This document shows, piece by piece, positions 25,124-32,853 of a stretch of 64,000 bases of DNA (position 1 is the first letter of the stretch; each line of letters opens with the position of its first letter). The stretch lies in sequence record MW812339.1, one strand, 5' to 3'. The position numbers were made by a program, and so were the translations under genes. Under the pieces are notes generated by a model. It was not told the DNA's origin and searched no databases. It saw only the letters and a list, made by a program, of their open reading frames with translations.

Positions 25124-26845
25124 TTAATCGCCGGTACTAATGTTGTTGCCTTTCACCAGTGGGTTGCGTTTCGCGAGGTTCAGGATTGTCTGCAGCGTTG
25201 CAGCGCCTTGACAAATGCGACGCACGATGCCGAGGTTCTTACGCAGAATCGCAAAGAAGTCAACATCATCCTGACCTTTATAGAAGACCATCGACAGTTC
25301 ACGACCGCCCGTCTTCAGACCGGTAGGACGTTCCAGTTCTTTGGTGATGACCTCGCTAATCAGATTAACGTACTGAGCGTTATTCTTGACCAGGTCTTCG
25401 AAGTCCTTCACTTTCTTGATGGTCTGCTCAACGGCCTTATCCAAATCGCTGTAGCGATTCAGGTTGGTGGCAGCAGTGTTGTCAGTGAAGCCTTGCTTAC
25501 CGAGTGTTACCACCACGGCTAACAGTTCGCGTTCATCGCCCACCGACACCAGACCTGCTTGACGCAGTTGTTCCAGACATTCACGGCCCAGGTAAGCAGA
25601 CGCTTGCGCGTTTACAATCACTTTACCCGGCATGAATTCAACACCATCGTCGTGACCGACCAGCCCACGAGCCATACCTTCCGGCATCACGACAGACGGA
25701 CAGGTGTCTGGACCGAAGCCACGTTTCGTGACATCGGAGACCATATAATTCATGGACGTGTTGAGGTTAGCCAACGATTGACCGAAGATTGCTGCGGTGT
25801 CATGCGCCAGTTTATTAACCAGTCTGCCGTCGTGTTCGGTTTTCTGGCCATTCCCGTTCATGCCACCGGCAACTGCTGGGTCAGTCATTTCAGCAAAGGC
25901 TTTCTGCAGAGAACCGAAGTAACCGATCAGCTCGTTAGCCGCATTCGATAGCTGCTTATAGTTCAGCTCGTTCGGGATACGGACACCAGCCTCACGGACT
26001 TTCTTCGGCAGGCCTGCGTGGGCTTTCGCCGCAACCTGCATCGGATAGATACCGTACGTCACATTGAACTGCAGGAGCATGTCGAGGATGTCGTGAATCA
26101 CGCTCTGTTGTGATTGACGCTTCTTCGGATATTCCTTGAACATTTCCGTGAACGGCGAACGTTTCAGCATAGAAGCCAGGTCGTTCAGGTATTCTTCCGC
26201 AGCCATGTTGGTCAACACTTCATCGGCCAGGGTTACGGCCAAGTTCAGGTTTTCCAGGTCACGCCCTTTCAGGCCTTTTGCTGCGGCCATGTACGCATCT
26301 TTGATGGTGGTGACTTTCAGCGAGCCCAGGACGGTGTTTTCATCCGTGCTGTAACTCTCAACTTTCTCATTCACCCCTTCCGCGTATGCTTCACCATCAG
26401 GTGTTGCATTGCCGGCAAAGCCAGAGCCGTTGTTGATAATCCAACCGATGATTTTCACAATCGCGGTCATCACCAACACAACCAGGCCGACTTTACCTGC
26501 GTTTGCCCAAGACTCCAGAGCAACGATAGTTTCTTTCTGGTGAGTCTTGGTGTAGTTCGATGTCAGTACACTACGGATGGCCGTTGGAATGGTGCCCGGA
26601 CGGCTAGATTCAACCGCTACCGCGACATCACGAGACAGGCCAGCACGACGCACTTCGTCGAGGATAGCCTCGAGCTGAAGAATCAGACGAGTACCGTAAA
26701 TCAGATCGGCTTCGTTGCGCTGCATGTACAGGTTAAGCTGGTTGACTGAATCAACACGCTCTGACATGCGGGAACGCAGGACTTCACCAATCTCCCCCAA
26801 ACGCCATTTGGGGTGGGAGGCGTTACCTGTCATTTCCATGCTCAT
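25124..26845 (-). CDS. Inner-head ejection protein (SPN3US gp47-like)
   Basis: 573 aa with AVE-79 and ALE-111 candidate cleavage sites, followed by a hydrophobic helix. Confidence 0.6.
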   Translation of the reverse strand: MSMEMTGNASHPKWRLGEIGEVLRSRMSERVDSVNQLNLYMQRNEADLIYGTRLILQLEAILDEVRRAGLSRDVAVAVESSRPGTIPTAIRSVLTSNYTKTHQKETIVALESWANAGKVGLVVLVMTAIVKIIGWIINNGSGFAGNATPDGEAYAEGVNEKVESYSTDENTVLGSLKVTTIKDAYMAAAKGLKGRDLENLNLAVTLADEVLTNMAAEEYLNDLASMLKRSPFTEMFKEYPKKRQSQQSVIHDILDMLLQFNVTYGIYPMQVAAKAHAGLPKKVREAGVRIPNELNYKQLSNAANELIGYFGSLQKAFAEMTDPAVAGGMNGNGQKTEHDGRLVNKLAHDTAAIFGQSLANLNTSMNYMVSDVTKRGFGPDTCPSVVMPEGMARGLVGHDDGVEFMPGKVIVNAQASAYLGRECLEQLRQAGLVSVGDERELLAVVVTLGKQGFTDNTAATNLNRYSDLDKAVEQTIKKVKDFEDLVKNNAQYVNLISEVITKELERPTGLKTGGRELSMVFYKGQDDVDFFAILRKNLGIVRRICQGAATLQTILNLAKRNPLVKGNNISTGD

Positions 26846-27291
26846 GAAATTTGTCCTTTCACCTCAGCCATGTAGAAACCGAACGTTTCCATGAAACGTC
26901 CAATCCACAGACCGACTGTTTCCCAGACATCAGCGCCAAGCGCCTGGTCGAAGATTTCACGCACAGAGAAACTCTGCATCGCACGTTCACCGCCGAATAC
27001 GTTGCAATAACGGTTCACGTACAGACCTACGGTCATGTCTTCGACAACACCCAGATCGACGCAATACAGTTCGTTTACGTCAGAAACGATGCTACGCATA
27101 ATCGGGCGCAGGAAGGTGCTGGCGGCTTCGGCACCACCACGAATGCCATTATCAGGCAGAACAGCGTTAAACGCCAGAGCGTAGGCTACAAGGCCTGTCA
27201 GGGCGCGTTGTGCCTCCACACCCTTTCCTTCATTGGTACGTTTGAAATCCAGTACCAGATTGTTCAATGAGACTTTGTGCGTCATGGTCAA
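26842..27291 (-). CDS. Probable head protein (149 aa)
   Basis: ORF coupled to the downstream gene; AAGGG RBS. Confidence 0.6.
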   Translation of the reverse strand: MTMTHKVSLNNLVLDFKRTNEGKGVEAQRALTGLVAYALAFNAVLPDNGIRGGAEAASTFLRPIMRSIVSDVNELYCVDLGVVEDMTVGLYVNRYCNVFGGERAMQSFSVREIFDQALGADVWETVGLWIGRFMETFGFYMAEVKGQIS

Positions 27292-27301
27292 TACCCTTAA
27301 C

Positions 27302-27742
27302 TTAAGAAACGGTCAAACCTGCTTCTTTGATGTGGTTAAGCAGCGTGTCGTAGATCACCTCTTCGTAATCAGTCACACCGCGAGTATAGTATTCGTGGGA
27401 ACCTTCGTAGGCCTGCAGCCAAGGTTCGGAACAATGGGTGCTATCAATGCGATACAAATGCAAGCTATCACCCGTCGTCATCTGATTTGCCCAGCCACCA
27501 GTGCTGCAAAGCTTCAGCGTATTACCGATTTGCTGAACTTTCACCGTGGCGGCAATGTTCTGCCCGCCATCACTGCCGCGATTCTTTGAAGCTGCATATT
27601 CGATGCCCGCCTTAATCGCTTCGCCTCGTGAGGGGAATGCAATCAGGGTCGGGCTATCGGTACCGATGCGTGTACCGTACAGATCACGATCGATTTGTTC
27701 AGCAGAAAGCACTTTCCAGTGATACGGCAACATCATCCACAA
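27302..27742 (-). CDS. Hypothetical protein with weak resemblance to Arr-like ADP-ribosyltransferase folds
   Basis: 146 aa. PYHW...LIAFPSRGEAIKAG...LHLYRID...HEYYT pattern, judged by eye only. Confidence 0.4.
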   Translation of the reverse strand: MWMMLPYHWKVLSAEQIDRDLYGTRIGTDSPTLIAFPSRGEAIKAGIEYAASKNRGSDGGQNIAATVKVQQIGNTLKLCSTGGWANQMTTGDSLHLYRIDSTHCSEPWLQAYEGSHEYYTRGVTDYEEVIYDTLLNHIKEAGLTVS

Positions 27743-27774: not shown

Positions 27775-29121
27775 CTACTTTACCTGGGAGAGTTTCGCGG
27801 AAGCAACACGCAGGTCATTCGACAGGTAACGTTCCAGAGAACGCTGGTAATCAACACCCGCGCGTTCACGACGACCAGACGGAGTCAGGGTCTTCATGAT
27901 AAAGCTGTAGATGTTATCTTTGTCTTTGACCGTCAACAGCAGCTTGTCGATTGACGCGATGCCGGCCAGAATACGTTTACGGTGGTCATTAGCCGCCTTG
28001 GTATTCTGGTCTTTGATAGTGTTCAGTTCTTCCACCAGGTTACGACGAATCGTTTCGAAACGTTCCTGCGGAGGATCGTAGATAGTGCCTTTCGGGTCAT
28101 TGATAATCAGACCGAAGGCCATGGAGATGGTACTGATGAACAAACCAACCGGCGAGGCCACCCCGACGATTAACATCGCCACTTCCATCATCTCCAGTGC
28201 CAGGTGAGCACCGTAGTTCATGTACGAACGGTTACGGAACAGATAGAACTGCGACGTTTCCATTTTGTACAGAGCAGATGCCAGGTATGGCGCTGCACCG
28301 AAGCGTGCCGCAAAGTCGTCAGCTGCGCGTTCCCAGGTACGGTTAGCAAAACCTTCCGAACCGGTCACAAACGGACGCTCCAGCAGAGTCTGCGTAACCA
28401 GGTGCATATAGATGTTCTCTTTTGAAAACTCTTTACACACGGTCTCAGGCTGGTTAATTTTGGTGTTCAGCATTCGCTCAACATCCTTCACGACCTTCAT
28501 GCGCACTGCCGGGTCTTCGGTTTCCATCATGCGGTTAGCCGCAGCATCCGCAATCAGGTTCGTGACCACAGTACGCATCAGCGTACGGAAGTAGTAATAA
28601 ACGTGGCCCACTTCATGCAAGATAACTGCCGCAATTTCCAGGTCGGACATGTCTAACGATGTCAGCAACTTAGGCGTCAGGTAAAGTGGGGACGGCACTT
28701 TACTGAGGTCGCCGGAAATCTTCGCGTTCTTGTCATCGAACTCACCGTTCAGCTCGTTCTCTTTGATGAACTTGCTGTAGACATCGAGGTCTTTGTTGCC
28801 CTGATAGAAGGTACGTTGCAGGTTGGAGACGATAGGGTTGTTCGCATCCAGTTTTGGCGGCTCTACGCCCGCGAACACCACGTCAGCAACGCCGAGTTCA
28901 GAACCGTTACGGAACAGAATGGTGATTCCGTTGTTTTCCAGGACCCAGGCAGCCACACCAGAACTATCATAGCCCGCAGGCGAGAAGTCGCCTGCTTCGC
29001 GGAATTTACCGATGACCGCAGCGAGAGCGGCCAATTTCTTTTTATCTTGGAATCCGATGGATTCCCTGGCCACGACTTTCGCCTCGGCCACACTACGAAT
29101 GTGCTTTTGCCAGTGTCCCAT
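27775..29121 (-). CDS. Head protein with a zincin / M48-like metallopeptidase signature (SPN3US gp45-like)
   Basis: ARE-20 site, HEVGH (169-173), and ERAADDFAARFG-AAPYLASALYKM. C-terminal hydrophobic segment. Confidence 0.7.
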   Translation of the reverse strand: MGHWQKHIRSVAEAKVVARESIGFQDKKKLAALAAVIGKFREAGDFSPAGYDSSGVAAWVLENNGITILFRNGSELGVADVVFAGVEPPKLDANNPIVSNLQRTFYQGNKDLDVYSKFIKENELNGEFDDKNAKISGDLSKVPSPLYLTPKLLTSLDMSDLEIAAVILHEVGHVYYYFRTLMRTVVTNLIADAAANRMMETEDPAVRMKVVKDVERMLNTKINQPETVCKEFSKENIYMHLVTQTLLERPFVTGSEGFANRTWERAADDFAARFGAAPYLASALYKMETSQFYLFRNRSYMNYGAHLALEMMEVAMLIVGVASPVGLFISTISMAFGLIINDPKGTIYDPPQERFETIRRNLVEELNTIKDQNTKAANDHRKRILAGIASIDKLLLTVKDKDNIYSFIMKTLTPSGRRERAGVDYQRSLERYLSNDLRVASAKLSQVK

Positions 29122-29191: not shown

Positions 29192-30976
29192 ATGGAAATC
29201 AATACTTATTTTGCACCTGAAGATGTCGTTGCAAAAGAGTGCAAACACGTCGCGTATGCCACGGACGATGAGAAGGAAAATGATTTTGTCCTCATCAAAG
29301 AGGTCATCCATACTAAGGAGGGCAGGTCTATTGGCCGCCTGGTAATGCGTGAAAACTTGAAGCGTCCAGTGTACGTTACTCGTCCTGAATTCCAGAACCA
29401 TCAAGAGAAAAAAGAGTTCGAGGAAAAGAGTAAATGTCAGGAGCTGTTCACGACCGATGCAGCGATGGCGAAGACGTTACAAATGGGTTTAGGCGCTCGA
29501 TTCCCTGACCCGAAAAAGAACCTGCGTCGTGTCTGTACCAGTCCGTATGCATATTGGGCTGACTTGCCCATTACGTCTTGGATTAAACAGAAGTATCTAA
29601 AGAAGTGGCCTAACGCAGTAACTCCAAATCGTCTATGCATCTACGACGTGGAGACCAACGAAATGGAAGGTACGAAAGAGCCGTGGATTATTTCGTTCAT
29701 CCTGGACGATGAGATTCACTTCTTTGGTGCCAAGAACTACATGGACAGGATTGGGAAGAATGCAGAAGAAATCATTCTCAAGAAGGCCCAGGAGTTGCTC
29801 AGCAAAATCGCGTTCGATGAAAAGAACAAGAAGACTGGTGAGAAGGAAACGAAGATTAAGGACATTATCAAAGGCTTCAAAATCTTCACTTACACTTGCG
29901 CTACCGCCGGTCAATGCATTGTTCGCATGTTCGAAGAAATCCACCCACGACTGCCTGACCTGTTAGTCGCTTGGAACCACCAGTTTGATATCTCCAAAAT
30001 GCTGGAGTGTTTGAAGAATGAAGGTATTGATCCTTTGGGTGTCTTTAACCATCCGGACGTTCCAGAGAAATACCGTCGTCTGTGGTTCAAAGAAGACCAG
30101 GCGAACAAAAAGACGGAGTCCAAGTCACTGACCAAGGCACCGTCGCAACAGTGGCACGTACTTTACTGCACCGCTTCGTTCTACTGTGTAGACGCCATGG
30201 TGCTGTTCCGTTCCTTGCGCGTACACGAAGGTCAACGTCCGTCGTATAAGCTCTCTGCGATTCTGTACAGTGAGCTGGGCTTGAACAAACTTGACATTCC
30301 AGGTCTGCCGTATGAAGACAACTTGCAATGGCACATAAAAGCACAGCGGGACTATCCGGCCGAGTACGCCGTCTACAACATCATGGATAACCTGTTAATT
30401 CTGTTGTTGGACAAAAAGACAAACGACTTGTCTTCAGCCATCTCGATTCTGGCCGGTTTCTCGATGTACGATATTTTCCCATCGCTACCGAAGCGTATTT
30501 GTATCGCCTTCACCTATTACCTGTACGAGCAAGGGCTGGTGATTGGTTCTGTTGGTTCTGCGATGCGTAACGATTACGATGAGGAGGTTATCGGGACGGA
30601 TGGGTGGATTGTCACCTTAACGGCGTGTATGAATGCCGAGAATGGTTTGACGGATATCCTGGAAGAGATTGGCTCGTTCTATTCTGCCTTCCGTGGTCAG
30701 ACCGCAGATGCCGACTTAACGCAGGCGTATCCATCAGCCACCAACATGATGAACCAGTCTCGTGAGACGACACTTATCGAGCTGCTGTCCATCACCGGTG
30801 TTGCTGAAGAGATTCGCCGTCGTGCTGGCGTGAACCTGACTGCTGGTCGTGTGAATGCCATGGAAATCGCAACCGACTTCTTCCGTCTGCCGGATAAGGA
30901 TACTGTATTGTCAGCGTTCTTAACGCGTCAGGGAGAAGCAGTGACTGACCCGATTGAGTACATCAACGGGTTCTAA
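29192..30976 (+). CDS. Split family-B DNA polymerase: 3'-5' exonuclease plus motif A subunit (phiKZ gp82-like)
   Basis: ExoI IYDVET, ExoII WNHQFD, ExoIII YNIMD; polymerase motif A DADLTQAYPS. Confidence 0.85.
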   Translation: MEINTYFAPEDVVAKECKHVAYATDDEKENDFVLIKEVIHTKEGRSIGRLVMRENLKRPVYVTRPEFQNHQEKKEFEEKSKCQELFTTDAAMAKTLQMGLGARFPDPKKNLRRVCTSPYAYWADLPITSWIKQKYLKKWPNAVTPNRLCIYDVETNEMEGTKEPWIISFILDDEIHFFGAKNYMDRIGKNAEEIILKKAQELLSKIAFDEKNKKTGEKETKIKDIIKGFKIFTYTCATAGQCIVRMFEEIHPRLPDLLVAWNHQFDISKMLECLKNEGIDPLGVFNHPDVPEKYRRLWFKEDQANKKTESKSLTKAPSQQWHVLYCTASFYCVDAMVLFRSLRVHEGQRPSYKLSAILYSELGLNKLDIPGLPYEDNLQWHIKAQRDYPAEYAVYNIMDNLLILLLDKKTNDLSSAISILAGFSMYDIFPSLPKRICIAFTYYLYEQGLVIGSVGSAMRNDYDEEVIGTDGWIVTLTACMNAENGLTDILEEIGSFYSAFRGQTADADLTQAYPSATNMMNQSRETTLIELLSITGVAEEIRRRAGVNLTAGRVNAMEIATDFFRLPDKDTVLSAFLTRQGEAVTDPIEYINGF

Positions 30977-31536: not shown

Positions 31537-32853
31537 TTAGGTAATGTGGAATTTAGGGATGAACTCTTTCACGACCGTTTCACGACCGTGCATTGCACCC
31601 ATCGCGGTGGTCATAACGTTCGAGAAGCCGGAAGAGATATCCGCAGCGATTGCACGCGGTTCTTCTGCTTTGTGGGCGTTAGCACATGCCGCACAACAGT
31701 CTACGTGACCCTGCTGACATAAGATGGGTCGACGAATACGGACAACTTTACCCATCTGCTTCTTCAAGAACTCTTCGGTCATCTGGTAGGGTTTGCCATC
31801 TACCATCGCGTTCATGCCGACATAGCGCTTGTAGTTTGCCTGGTTGATAACCAACGCATGGGTAAGTTTGGTACCGCAATCCCCAGGGACGATTTTGTGG
31901 TTCTGGAAAATCATCTGGATAATACGTACCTGCTCACCACCTTTTGCGGTTTCAGCACCACGCATGAAGGAGCCTTCACGGGTATCGTTGAACTTCTCAA
32001 CCAGATTGCGCATCCCCGTCTGGTCAACTTCCATCAGACTGGTTGGGATTAGGGTGAAGTCCGCACCTTCTTTGAAGGCAGTTTGAATCCCGTACATCAG
32101 CATCAGCTTACGACGACGCATACGCGATTTCGCTGAACTGTAGAACTCCACAGATTGGTCACCAGACAACCATTCTTTATCGAGTTCATCCAGCGCTTGC
32201 TCAATCTTAACAATGACCGCTGGGTTATCCAACTCGTCTTTGTGCTTGAGTAATAACGCATCACGCACCTTATACGCATCAGGATGCGTTGTAAGGCTTC
32301 TAATCGTACCGGTAGGGGCAATGCCTCGGGTAAGTGGTGCAAGCTCGTGTAAGCCGCCCACGAAGCGTCCTACCATCTCTGGACGAATAGCCACGTCGTT
32401 CTCTGGTTCGTCGTCGTCATTATCCAGGCAACGGTCGTACATCTCTTCGGTGTACGACATCGGGTCACGGGATTCGGCCAGGTACGGCATTCGCGTTTCG
32501 AAAGCGTAATAGATGACAATCCAGTTGAACACGTAGCGACCAACCGTGGTTGGAATAGGCCCGTTTAATCCTGGGTACATTTCTGGGCGCAGTTCAAACT
32601 GATCTTCGGGGAAGAACAACTCTTCTCCTTTCTTCGCTCCCTGAATAGGCTCCCAACTTCCTACCCCATCCTTTTCCACGTAGTAGTGCGCGGTTTCGTC
32701 GATGTAGTTTAAGTCGAACGGTTCTGGCGGTTCTCCGTTCTCATTGAAGATGGCAACGTTGAACACAGCGATACGCCATACCAGTCGCCGCCAGGCTTCT
32801 GCTTGGCACGCTGCGACCAAGTATTCAATCTTGTTCATAGTTTTCCTCTTCAC
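31537..32853 (-). CDS. Virion RNA polymerase beta'-like subunit (phiKZ gp80 / SPN3US gp42-like)
   Basis: GAETAKGG, GDCGT, VRIRRPILCQ...CCAAC and AMGAMH resemble beta' C-terminal regions; synteny. Confidence 0.8.
   Translation of the reverse strand: MKRKTMNKIEYLVAACQAEAWRRLVWRIAVFNVAIFNENGEPPEPFDLNYIDETAHYYVEKDGVGSWEPIQGAKKGEELFFPEDQFELRPEMYPGLNGPIPTTVGRYVFNWIVIYYAFETRMPYLAESRDPMSYTEEMYDRCLDNDDDEPENDVAIRPEMVGRFVGGLHELAPLTRGIAPTGTIRSLTTHPDAYKVRDALLLKHKDELDNPAVIVKIEQALDELDKEWLSGDQSVEFYSSAKSRMRRRKLMLMYGIQTAFKEGADFTLIPTSLMEVDQTGMRNLVEKFNDTREGSFMRGAETAKGGEQVRIIQMIFQNHKIVPGDCGTKLTHALVINQANYKRYVGMNAMVDGKPYQMTEEFLKKQMGKVVRIRRPILCQQGHVDCCAACANAHKAEEPRAIAADISSGFSNVMTTAMGAMHGRETVVKEFIPKFHIT

What the first reader, a model, noticed from the sequence alone, without database searches (positions are those of the whole stretch)
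27775..29121. Head-cluster protein with a full M48-type zinc-protease signature and a membrane segment
Seen: ILHEVGH (28603-28617), a downstream third-ligand motif WERAADDFAARFG followed by LASALYKM, a hydrophobic stretch (VAMLIVGVASPVGLFISTISMAFGLII), and an ARE-20 maturation site. Established: HExxH plus ExxAD...LxSALxKL typifies M48/HtpX-like membrane zinc peptidases. Inference: a second protease, probably packaged and ejected, that could process ejected proteins, remodel the membrane or destroy defence proteins at entry.
Basis: partly seen in the sequence, partly recalled or inferred. Interest (0 to 1): 0.65.

Follow-up and report, generated by a model that had tools for sequence, protein, structure and literature searches.

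The report
Head-packaged M48-like zinc peptidase
This jumbo-phage gene encodes a zinc protease of the Ste24/HtpX type that is packed inside the phage head; the family was already flagged in the literature, but nobody knows what it cuts or where.

Summary
ORF 27775-29121(-), 448 aa, carries HEVGH, WERAADDF, LASALYKM, a 27-residue uncharged hydrophobic stretch and V-A-R-E20|S. The window is Erwinia phage pEa_SNUABM_29. The protein is the ortholog of SPN3US gp45 (82.7% identity) and phiKZ gp84, chimallivirus core gene cg22.

Across 134 relatives (21-83% identity) E20, H169, E170, G172, H173, E264, D268 and R354 are invariant. A family profile hits ZMPSTE24 at E=3.3e-5 over both zinc motifs. A pLDDT-90 model has M48 structures as its top structural matches.

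Published mass spectrometry shows SPN3US gp45 is a head protein cut by the prohead protease after residue 20. So "packaged M48-like peptidase" is well supported.

It is not new. Iyer et al. 2021 cite SEGD1_047, an 82.7%-identical ortholog, as a conserved uncharacterised zincin-like metallopeptidase of group 1 jumbo phages. AR9 g051 and some orthologs are already annotated as M48.

- the M48 assignment through colinear motifs;
- a cleavage site kept family-wide and inside fusion polyproteins;
- a composition-conserved, sequence-variable TM-like segment;
- a neighbour (gp47 ortholog) whose mature N-terminus is a TM-like helix.

Ejection, membrane action and substrates remain untested inference.

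The parts
27775..29121 (-). Gene for the 448-aa M48-like metallopeptidase. It is the ortholog of SPN3US gp45, phiKZ gp84 and SEGD1_047, and belongs to chimallivirus core gene cg22 and PHROG 2767.
   Evidence: ORF. 100% identical to MW812339.1 QVW55161.1. phrog_2767 E=2.8e-167. Orthology.
29062..29121 (-). N-terminal 20-residue propeptide ending in V17-A18-R19-E20, cut before S21. This is a predicted prohead-protease site and capsid-targeting peptide.
   Evidence: SPN3US gp45 is cleaved at ASE-20 by gp245 in every MS experiment; the site logo is V-A-x-E|S. E20 is invariant and P3 is S/A/G in 121 of 134 relatives. The site is kept at the junction of fusion polyproteins.
28699..28713 (-). G137-D-L-S-K141, the predicted edge strand before the active-site helix. 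It corresponds to the M48 N-A-F-A strand.
   Evidence: G137 is near-invariant. hhalign aligns this stretch plus HExxH to E. coli BepA, HtpX and LoiP. Strands at 134-137 and 144-148 in the model.
28603..28617 (-). HEVGH, residues 169-173: two zinc-ligand histidines and the catalytic glutamate.
   Evidence: H169, E170, G172 and H173 in 134 of 134. Aligned to ZMPSTE24 H335-E-x-x-H339.
28297..28335 (-). WERAADDFAARFG, residues 263-275. E264 is the predicted third zinc ligand; D268 is also invariant.
   Evidence: Aligned to the ZMPSTE24 R-R-F-E415-x-x-A-D motif. The same E..AD motif is invariant in E. coli BepA, LoiP and HtpX.
28261..28284 (-). LASALYKM, residues 280-287: continuation of the Glu helix, matching the M48 L-x-x-A-L-x-K-L motif.
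   Evidence: L280 in 120, L284 in 119 and K286 in 109 of 134.
28102..28182 (-). Uncharged hydrophobic segment, residues 314-340. The model shows a helix-turn-helix (303-321 and 324-340) with a conserved Gly326 in the turn.
   Evidence: KD19 is at least 1.6 in 96% of 134 relatives. Charged fraction is at most 0.03 per column. Column entropy is 3.05 against 2.12 for other hydrophobic columns (p=4e-10). Indels occur at 324-331.
28060..28080 (-). Y348-D-P-P-Q-E-R354, the likely counterpart of the M48 C-terminal H-P-x-x-x-x-R motif.
   Evidence: R354 is invariant; Y348 occurs in 128 of 134 and His in 5; D349 in 131 of 134. E. coli M48 proteins keep H246-P247...R252. A sub-optimal hhalign alignment puts R354 on BepA R252. 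The structural alignment ends at model 359 and ZMPSTE24 470.
27302..27742 (-). Accessory 146-aa gene directly downstream, of unknown function. It is probably not part of the peptidase function.
   Evidence: phrog_22066. Present in 25 Seoulvirus-like records at this position, absent from SPN3US.
26842..27291 (-). Ortholog of SPN3US gp46, a small head protein encoded in the same gene string.
   Evidence: phrog_8529. SPN3US_0046 is scored as a head protein. Same gene order in phiKZ, gp84-85-86.
25124..26845 (-). Ortholog of SPN3US gp47, an essential head protein. V-A-L-E111|S is followed at once by a TM-like helix at residues 114-140. It is a possible partner of the peptidase.
   Evidence: phrog_8131. 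SPN3US gp47 is cleaved at ALE-111 and is essential. KD19 of 2.55 is the highest in the window. Two metagenomic polyproteins join a gp47-like stretch to the peptidase domain.

Best explanation
The gene encodes a zinc metallopeptidase of the M48 (Ste24/HtpX/BepA) lineage that is an internal head protein.

Shown, or shown for close orthologs:
- The protein is made with a 20-residue N-terminal peptide and incorporated into the prohead.
- The T4 gp21-like prohead protease trims it after V-A-R-E20.
- The roughly 48-kDa mature form stays in the DNA-filled head.
- All residues needed for zinc binding and catalysis are under strict selection (H169, E170, H173, E264), as are D268, Y348 and R354.

Inferred:
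- The enzyme is active.
- Its 27-residue uncharged, sequence-variable hairpin is a latent membrane anchor that is shielded inside the capsid.
- The protein leaves the head with the DNA, together with the gp47 ortholog, whose mature N-terminus is also a TM-like helix.
- It then inserts into the host inner membrane and cuts membrane-proximal substrates at the entry site, either co-ejected phage proteins or host envelope proteins.

Confidence in identity (packaged, prohead-protease-processed M48-like peptidase) is about 0.85. Confidence that it acts after ejection at a membrane is about 0.35. The figure given below is for the whole chain.
For: Identity:
- Pfam PF01435 scores 20.3 bits, equal to its cut-off. 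It is the only such match in the whole phage genome.
- The 134-sequence profile hits ZMPSTE24 at E=3.3e-5, aligning HExxH and E415.
- The AF2 model has pLDDT 90.5 and pTM 0.90.
- In the second-look alignment the six best structural matches are all M48: ZMPSTE24, Ste24p and BepA at Z 6.2-7.8, with the next match at 5.0. The wide search also lists 3c37, the HtpX domain and M13 gluzincins.
- hhalign to E. coli HtpX and LoiP gives 84-86% probability.
- The catalytic Glu, which is not a metal ligand, is invariant in 134 of 134 sequences.

Packaging and processing:
- SPN3US gp45 is a head protein with about 340 PSMs per replicate. It is cleaved at ASE-20 in all experiments.
- The site is conserved family-wide and inside polyproteins.

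Membrane inference:
- The hydrophobic segment is conserved in composition but not in sequence or length.
- The gp47 ortholog has a TM-like helix right after its cleavage site.
- Fusions join gp47-like and gp45-like parts.
- All cleavages mapped in SPN3US heads fit the prohead-protease motif, so no in-head activity of a second protease has been seen.

Importance:
- phiKZ orf84 has no disruptive transposon insertions in 1242 bp.
- The gene is a core gene of nucleus-forming phages.
Against: - No experiment shows zinc binding, activity, ejection or membrane insertion for any family member.
- Phage heads contain no lipid, so the hydrophobic hairpin may simply be buried in the fold or in an oligomer interface. 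The model coordinates could not be inspected for exposure.
- Structural Z-scores are below 8 and the best Foldseek E-value is only 0.09.
- The M48 His of the C-terminal H-P motif is Tyr here.
- In Bacillus phage AR9 one paralog lacks any hydrophobic segment and the other has it in a different place, so the hairpin is not universal.
- phiKZ orf85-86 also lack insertions yet tolerate deletion, so the Tn-seq result for orf84 may reflect a polar effect or other artefact.
- gp84 was not among the injected proteins reported for phiKZ in the papers read.
Confidence: 0.4

Rival explanations
1. Maturation peptidase acting inside the prohead. After activation by the prohead protease, the enzyme degrades propeptide or scaffold fragments, or makes additional cuts, so that they can leave the capsid before DNA packaging. 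The hydrophobic hairpin forms part of a substrate chamber or an oligomer interface rather than a membrane anchor.
For: - This is the role proposed by Iyer et al. 2021 for this very family.
- The enzyme is present in the head at the right time, and is itself a prohead-protease substrate.
- SPN3US propeptides are broken into several pieces and mostly cleared.
- M48 enzymes typically act on peptides or unfolded chains (established knowledge).
- AR9 g118 lies next to the major head protein gene.
Against: - All 14 cleavage sites mapped in SPN3US heads follow A-x-E, the gp245 motif, and recombinant gp245 alone fragments gp53. No orphan cleavage that would need a second enzyme is reported.
- This reading does not explain why a 27-residue charge-free stretch is kept in composition while its sequence and length drift.
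Confidence: 0.3
2. Assembly-stage membrane tether. The hairpin anchors the protein, and with it the nascent prohead core, to the host inner membrane where these phages start capsid assembly. The peptidase activity releases the particle or processes membrane-bound partners before the capsid leaves the membrane.
For: - Conserved TM-like segments occur in two head proteins of one gene string.
- Assembly of chimallivirus capsids at the cell membrane is my recollection of published microscopy; it was not checked here.
- T4-type portal-to-membrane recruitment is discussed for other jumbo phages.
Against: - The full-length mature protein, hairpin included, is recovered from purified heads at the expected 48.2 kDa. 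It would therefore have to be extracted from the bilayer intact.
- There is no evidence for any membrane step.
Confidence: 0.1
3. Non-catalytic structural head protein that retains a zincin-derived fold. The metal site serves only to stabilise the fold, or is vestigial.
For: - Databases mostly call it 'virion structural protein'.
- No activity has ever been measured.
- His is replaced by Tyr in the C-terminal motif.
Against: The general-base Glu170, which is not needed for metal binding, is invariant in 134 of 134 sequences at 21-83% identity. So are H169, H173, E264, D268 and R354. The active-site blocks are the most conserved parts of the protein. Pseudo-enzymes normally lose such residues.
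Confidence: 0.1

Closest known systems
SPN3US gp45, SEGD1_047 (AMR59696.1) and phiKZ gp84 (chimallivirus core gene cg22, PHROG 2767)
   Same: These are direct orthologs: 82.7% identity to SPN3US and SEGD1, about 24% to phiKZ. They share the same position beside the split DNA polymerase and the gp46/gp47 string, the same motifs, and an N-terminal (S/A/G)-x-E site. SPN3US gp45 is experimentally a head protein cleaved after residue 20. SEGD1_047 is the exemplar of the 'uncharacterized zincin-like metallopeptidase' of Iyer et al. 2021.
   Different: There is nothing essential. This phage has ARE-20 instead of ASE-20, and an extra small gene downstream that SPN3US lacks.
ZMPSTE24 / Ste24p (MEROPS M48A)
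   Same: The best sequence-profile and structure matches are to these proteins. HExxH, the E-x-x-A-D third-ligand helix, the L-x-x-A-L-x-K-L continuation and a C-terminal ...P-x-x-R motif appear in the same order.
   Different: Ste24 is a seven-helix integral membrane barrel. The phage protein has one short hydrophobic hairpin, inserted after the Glu helix. It also has a soluble N-terminal domain (residues 21-125), a four-helix insertion (181-252) and a C-terminal helical domain (355-448). It has Tyr instead of His in the last motif, and it is packaged in a virion.
E. coli HtpX, BepA and LoiP (M48B/C)
   Same: They share the edge strand plus the HExxH helix (hhalign 84-86% probability for HtpX and LoiP), the E..AD motif and the final Arg. 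BepA is a structural match at Z 6.1-6.2.
   Different: HtpX has its hydrophobic helices before HExxH and between the two motifs. BepA carries a TPR domain and is periplasmic. None of them is made with a prohead-protease propeptide.
Bacillus phage AR9 g051 and g118 ('zincin protease')
   Same: These are distant relatives found by structure (BFVD E=2.5e-6 and 4e-3) and by the family profile, in three colinear segments. g051 is annotated pfam01435, and g118 lies beside the major head gene. Both begin with a short peptide ending in Glu.
   Different: There are two paralogs instead of one. g051 has no hydrophobic segment, and g118 has it between the motifs. The host is Gram-positive and the phage does not form a nucleus.
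T4 internal proteins (IPI-III) with capsid-targeting sequences
   Same: Both have a short N-terminal peptide of 10-20 residues removed by the prohead protease after Glu, and both reside inside the head. The SPN3US authors draw this comparison for gp45.
   Different: T4 internal proteins are small, abundant, non-enzymatic or anti-restriction proteins known to be ejected. Ejection is not shown here, and this protein is an enzyme-like 48-kDa protein.

Membership tests
MEROPS M48 / Pfam PF01435 Peptidase_M48 | HExxH motif on the active-site helix (two zinc-ligand His residues and the catalytic Glu) | tested here: met
   HEVGH is at residues 169-173. H, E, G and H are invariant in 134 of 134 relatives. 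The motif aligns to the ZMPSTE24 HELGH.
MEROPS M48 / Pfam PF01435 Peptidase_M48 | Third zinc ligand Glu in an E-x-x-A-D motif on a downstream helix (gluzincin arrangement) | tested here: met
   E264 and D268 are invariant, and position 267 is A/S. The motif aligns to the ZMPSTE24 E415 motif. The same motif is invariant in E. coli BepA, LoiP and HtpX.
MEROPS M48 / Pfam PF01435 Peptidase_M48 | Score at or above the curated Pfam gathering threshold | tested here: met
   20.3 bits against a cut-off of 20.3, E=5e-4, profile positions 50-164 of 186. The six-frame search gives 19.4 bits, or 22.2 with neighbours in the frame. This is a marginal pass. The nine fusion-protein relatives that were scanned had no Pfam family at E<=0.001.
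MEROPS M48 / Pfam PF01435 Peptidase_M48 | Zincin catalytic fold resembling solved M48 structures | tested here: met
   The model has pLDDT 90.5. The top matches are ZMPSTE24 at Z 7.8 (184 residues aligned, rmsd 7.0), Ste24p at 7.2-7.6 and BepA at 6.1-6.2. The first unrelated full-domain match scores 5.0. Foldseek's top hit is ZMPSTE24 at E=0.09, probability 0.87. All Z-scores are below 8, so the fold evidence counts only together with the sequence-profile hit.
MEROPS M48 / Pfam PF01435 Peptidase_M48 | C-terminal H-P-x-x-x-x-R motif | tested here: inconclusive
   E. coli M48 proteins keep H246, P247 and R252. The phage family has Y348-D349-x-P351-x-x-R354, with Arg invariant, Tyr in 128 of 134 and His in 5 of 134. 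The only alignment is a non-significant 10-column one, plus matching ends of the structural alignment. A 38-residue fragment found nothing in the PDB.
MEROPS M48 / Pfam PF01435 Peptidase_M48 | Zinc binding and peptidase activity | not testable with these tools
   No biochemical data exist for any family member.
MEROPS M48 / Pfam PF01435 Peptidase_M48 | Membrane association (integral in M48A and HtpX; not universal, since BepA is soluble) | tested here: inconclusive
   There is one uncharged segment at residues 314-340, with KD19 of 2.18. It is conserved as a property in 96% of relatives. No TM predictor or experiment was available, and the protein is recovered from lipid-free heads.
SPN3US gp45 / phiKZ gp84 head-protein family (cg22, PHROG 2767) | Full-length sequence similarity to the family | tested here: met
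   phrog_2767 E=2.8e-167 over residues 1-447. 82.7% identity to SPN3US gp45. The family profile finds 2103 cluster representatives at E<=1e-3.
SPN3US gp45 / phiKZ gp84 head-protein family (cg22, PHROG 2767) | Conserved gene neighbourhood: divergent from the DNA polymerase and followed by the gp46/gp47 (phiKZ gp85/86) string | tested here: met
SPN3US gp45 / phiKZ gp84 head-protein family (cg22, PHROG 2767) | N-terminal prohead-protease site, (S/A/G)-x-E, giving a short propeptide | tested here: met
   The sequence V-A-R-E20|S fits the published V-A-x-E|S logo. E20 is invariant, P3 is S/A/G in 121 of 134 and P1' is A/S/G in 125 of 134. Cleavage itself is shown only for SPN3US.
SPN3US gp45 / phiKZ gp84 head-protein family (cg22, PHROG 2767) | Presence in the mature head | not testable with these tools
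   This is taken from SPN3US mass spectrometry of virions and tailless heads. No proteome of this phage was seen.
Ejected internal head proteins (T4 IP-like, phiKZ inner-body cargo) | Delivery into the host cell with the DNA | not tested
   No data. phiKZ gp84 is not named among the injected proteins in the papers read.

The most novel reading that the evidence does not exclude
The gp45-like peptidase and the gp47-like protein form an ejected, membrane-inserting module. Both are head proteins trimmed by the prohead protease, both carry a TM-like segment, and they are occasionally fused in metagenomic phages. On this reading, the M48-type enzyme enters the inner membrane at the injection site. 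There it cleaves host or phage membrane proteins to help build or release the lipid vesicle that shelters the incoming genome of nucleus-forming phages.
Probability: 0.12. Interest if true: 0.75.

Novelty: already known. Interest (0 to 1): 0.35.

Why it matters
Nucleus-forming jumbo phages pack more than 50 proteins into the head, and most have no known role. This is one of the few with a recognisable enzymatic site. It is a core gene, and in phiKZ it tolerates no disruptive transposon insertions.

If the enzyme is active, it is either a second maturation protease or an enzyme delivered into the cell at the first moment of infection. That is the stage at which these phages form a lipid vesicle around their DNA by an unknown mechanism.

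The catalytic residues, the cleavage site and the hydrophobic hairpin defined here give exact targets for mutagenesis in the SPN3US amber system or the phiKZ Cas13a system. As a discovery it is modest, because the peptidase prediction is already published and annotated.

Tried and rejected
- Single-sequence search of the PDB gave only noise.
- The first AF2 model, from 15 close relatives, was poor (pLDDT 65.8, Glu-helix region below 50). Its Foldseek search was meaningless. It was replaced by the 134-sequence model.
- Foldseek on the good model stayed above E=0.001.
- A 38-residue C-terminal fragment found nothing in the PDB.
- hhalign against single E. coli M48 proteins aligned only the strand plus HExxH. 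The BepA probability was only 36%.
- No whole genome is held for the window, so the GenBank record was searched instead.
- The word-based homolog search found only close relatives.
- Pfam found nothing in the nine fusion proteins.
- The ESM Atlas gave only unnamed viral clusters; in one of them 15% of members carry PF01435.
There is therefore no verdict on binding.
- Literature searches found no functional statement. Terms tried were jumbo phage/M48/virion, PHIKZ084, gp84 and M48+jumbo+phage. The Goslar structure paper, the EPI-vesicle papers and the 2016 SPN3US paper do not mention the protein. Thomas et al. 2012 is not held.
- I rejected a chance HExxH and a vestigial site, because of the invariance across 134 sequences.
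Full report
**What is there**

The window is identical to Erwinia phage pEa_SNUABM_29 (MW812339.1, genus Seoulvirus). The flagged ORF, 27775-29121 on the minus strand, encodes 448 residues and is annotated there only as a hypothetical protein.

- HEVGH at residues 169-173 (28603-28617). The quoted coordinates cover HEVGH; ILHEVGH runs to 28623.
- WERAADDFAARFG at residues 263-275.
- LASALYKM at residues 280-287.
- A hydrophobic stretch at residues 314-340, which holds the protein's Kyte-Doolittle maximum of 2.18.
- ARE at residues 18-20.

**Who it is**

tblastn finds the protein in 203 phage genomes. It is 82.7% identical to SPN3US gp45 ('virion structural protein 1'), in the same gene order. 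It lies divergent from the DNA polymerase and upstream of the gp46 and gp47 orthologs. The phiKZ ortholog is gp84, followed by gp85 and gp86.

In the core-genome table of nucleus-forming phages it is cg22 (Goslar gp067, phiKZ gp084, RAY gp286). It is listed as 'putative virion structural protein' and is not marked as unique to chimallin-encoding phages. PHROG 2767, of unknown function, matches at E=2.8e-167.

An exhaustive profile search finds 2103 cluster representatives at E<=1e-3 and 616 at E<=1e-30. This is a very large family, mostly metagenomic.

**Is it an M48-type peptidase?**

Sequence evidence:
- Pfam PF01435 scores 20.3 bits, exactly the gathering cut-off. It is the only such match in the phage genome.
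- A profile of 15 close relatives puts ZMPSTE24 and Ste24p on top of the PDB, but only at E=0.07.
- A profile of 134 diverse relatives (21-83% identity) raises this to E=3.3e-5. HExxH aligns to ZMPSTE24 H335-H339, and the phage E264 aligns to the third zinc ligand E415.
- In those 134 sequences the invariant columns are E20, H169, E170, G172, H173, E264, D268 and R354. Y348 and D349 are nearly invariant.
- The two motif blocks have the lowest column entropy in the protein.

Structural evidence:
- The shallow alignment gave a poor model. The deep one gave pLDDT 90.5 and pTM 0.90.
- An all-against-representatives structural search ranks ZMPSTE24 (Z 7.8) and Ste24p (Z 7.2) first. It also lists BepA (6.1), the M48 protein 3c37 (6.0), the HtpX domain (5.1) and M13 gluzincins.
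- In the second-look alignment the six best chains are all M48, at Z 6.2-7.8. The scores then drop to 5.0.
- Foldseek alone is weak; its best hit is ZMPSTE24 at E=0.09.

Comparison with E. coli M48 proteins:
- hhalign against HtpX and LoiP gives 84-86% probability, but only over the edge strand plus HExxH.
- E. coli BepA, LoiP and HtpX share invariant HExxH, E..AD and H-P-x-x-x-x-R.
- The phage Y348-D-x-P-x-x-R354 lies in the corresponding place. A sub-optimal alignment puts R354 on BepA R252. Five family members have His instead of Tyr at position 348.
- I take that last correspondence as likely but unproven.

Taken together, the assignment to the M48 lineage of gluzincins is sound, at about 0.85. 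Features specific to this family are:
- an N-terminal domain (residues 21-125);
- a four-helix insertion between the two zinc motifs (181-252), which on its own matches many small helical bundles;
- the hydrophobic hairpin, inserted between the Glu helix and the final motif;
- a C-terminal helical domain.

**Packaging and processing**

This part rests on published work with the 82.7%-identical ortholog. SPN3US gp45 is scored as a head protein in virions and tailless heads, with about 340 spectrum matches per replicate, similar to gp47. The prohead protease gp245 cleaves it at ASE-20 in every experiment, giving a 48.2-kDa mature protein listed as 'Head, unknown function'. The authors compare the 20-residue peptide to T4 capsid-targeting sequences.

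The gp245 logo is V-A-x-E|S, and the protein here reads V-A-R-E20|S. Across the family:
- P1 Glu is invariant;
- P3 is S/A/G in 121 of 134 sequences;
- P1' is A/S/G in 125 of 134 sequences;
- the new N-terminus (S/A)-I-x-(F/Y/H)-Q is itself conserved.

Metagenomic proteins of 800-1450 residues carry the peptidase domain at their C-terminal end. At least six of the seven keep the same (S/A/G/T)-x-E|(A/S/G)-I..Q junction internally. The prohead protease would therefore release the domain from these polyproteins.

**The hydrophobic segment**

Columns 314-341 are almost free of charge in all 134 sequences, with a charged fraction of 0.03 or less. A 19-residue hydropathy of 1.6 or more is reached in 96% of sequences. 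In 132 of 134 this segment holds the protein-wide maximum.

These columns are nevertheless far more variable than other hydrophobic columns: entropy 3.05 against 2.12, p=4e-10. They contain indels around a conserved Gly326.

Conserved composition with drifting sequence and length is what lipid-facing segments show, and is unusual for a protein core. It is still only a property. No TM predictor was available, I could not inspect the model for exposure, and the protein is recovered from lipid-free heads.

**The neighbourhood**

The gp47 ortholog (25124-26845, minus strand) has V-A-L-E111|S. SPN3US gp47 is cut at ALE-111 and is essential. The site is followed immediately by the strongest hydrophobic segment in the window, residues 114-140 with KD 2.55.

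Two of the fusion proteins have an N-terminal stretch weakly similar to the gp47 family. The matches are phrog_8131 at E=1.5e-6, and phmmer at 6.6e-5 and 2.8e-4.

**Genetics from the literature**

In phiKZ Tn-seq, orf84 (1242 bp) has no insertion that passes the filters, and 10 when all reads are counted. The genome-wide density is one insertion per 42 bp. However, orf85-86 look the same in that data set yet tolerate deletion. Essentiality of orf84 is therefore suggested, not proven.

**Prior art**

Iyer et al. [quoted passage not shown] AMR59696.1 is SEGD1_047, the ortholog of this protein.

Annotation had also picked up the similarity:
- AR9 g051 is annotated 'zincin protease, pfam01435'.
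- Some orthologs are labelled 'beta-barrel assembly-enhancing protease' or 'M48 family lipoprotein protease'.
- BFVD lists related uncultured-phage proteins as M48 peptidases.

None of the SPN3US, phiKZ or Goslar papers that I read connects the head protein gp45/gp84 with this prediction. No paper in the library contains M48, jumbo and phage together.

The core of the finding is therefore already known as a prediction.
- the M48 placement through colinear motifs;
- the link to the mass-spectrometry data;
- family-wide conservation of the cleavage site, including in polyproteins;
- the quantitative description of the hydrophobic segment and of its counterpart in gp47.

**How it most likely works**

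Shown, or shown for close orthologs: head location, cleavage after residue 20, and strict conservation of a complete catalytic set that includes the non-ligand Glu170. That conservation argues strongly against a vestigial site.

Inferred: the enzyme is active. The short propeptide serves targeting and possibly latency.

The site of action is open. I favour action after ejection, at the inner membrane, at about 0.35, for two reasons. No non-A-x-E cleavage has been reported in heads. And two co-encoded head proteins carry TM-like segments that have no obvious use inside a capsid.

The other readings:
- The maturation role proposed by Iyer et al. is nearly as likely, at about 0.3.
- A membrane-tether role during assembly is at about 0.1.
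- A purely structural role is at about 0.1.

AR9 has two paralogs, one without a hydrophobic segment and one with it in the HtpX-like position. This shows that the hairpin is not a fixed feature of the wider clade, and it is a caution against building too much on it.

**Verdict**

The peptidase prediction is already in the literature, and the function is still uncharacterised. Interest is moderate to low as a discovery, but the gene offers a clean, testable target.

Noticed in passing
window 25124-26845 (-): In the gp47 ortholog, the conserved prohead-protease site V-A-L-E111|S is followed at once by the strongest TM-like segment in the window (residues 114-140, KD19 2.55). The mature essential head protein would therefore start with a hydrophobic helix.
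   Followed up: partly
window 27302-27742 (-): A 146-aa accessory gene (phrog_22066, no Pfam match) is wedged between the gp45 and gp46 orthologs. It is found at this position in 25 Seoulvirus-like phage records but is absent from SPN3US itself.
   Followed up: partly
proteins P0065, P0066, P0068, P0102, P0117, P0119, P0145 (metagenomic): Polyproteins of 800-1450 aa end in the peptidase domain, and at least six of the seven keep an internal (S/A/G/T)-x-E|(A/S/G)-I..Q junction. In two of them (P0066, P0117) the N-terminal part weakly resembles the gp47 family. The remaining N-terminal parts match nothing in Pfam.
   Followed up: partly
L033:4784-6061 (-) and L034:2655-3626 (+) (Bacillus phage AR9 g051 and g118): These are two distant paralogs annotated 'zincin protease'. 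Both begin with M-V-x-T-x-L-L-E, possibly the AR9 prohead-protease site. g118 sits next to the major head gene and has its hydrophobic segment between HExxH and the Glu motif, while g051 has none.
   Followed up: partly
window 29192-30976 (+) and 31537-32853 (-): The divergent upstream neighbour is one part of the split DNA polymerase (phrog_3011). It is followed by a virion-type RNA polymerase beta-subunit fragment (phrog_2962). Replication, transcription and head genes are interleaved here, as is described for phiKZ-like genomes.
   Followed up: no
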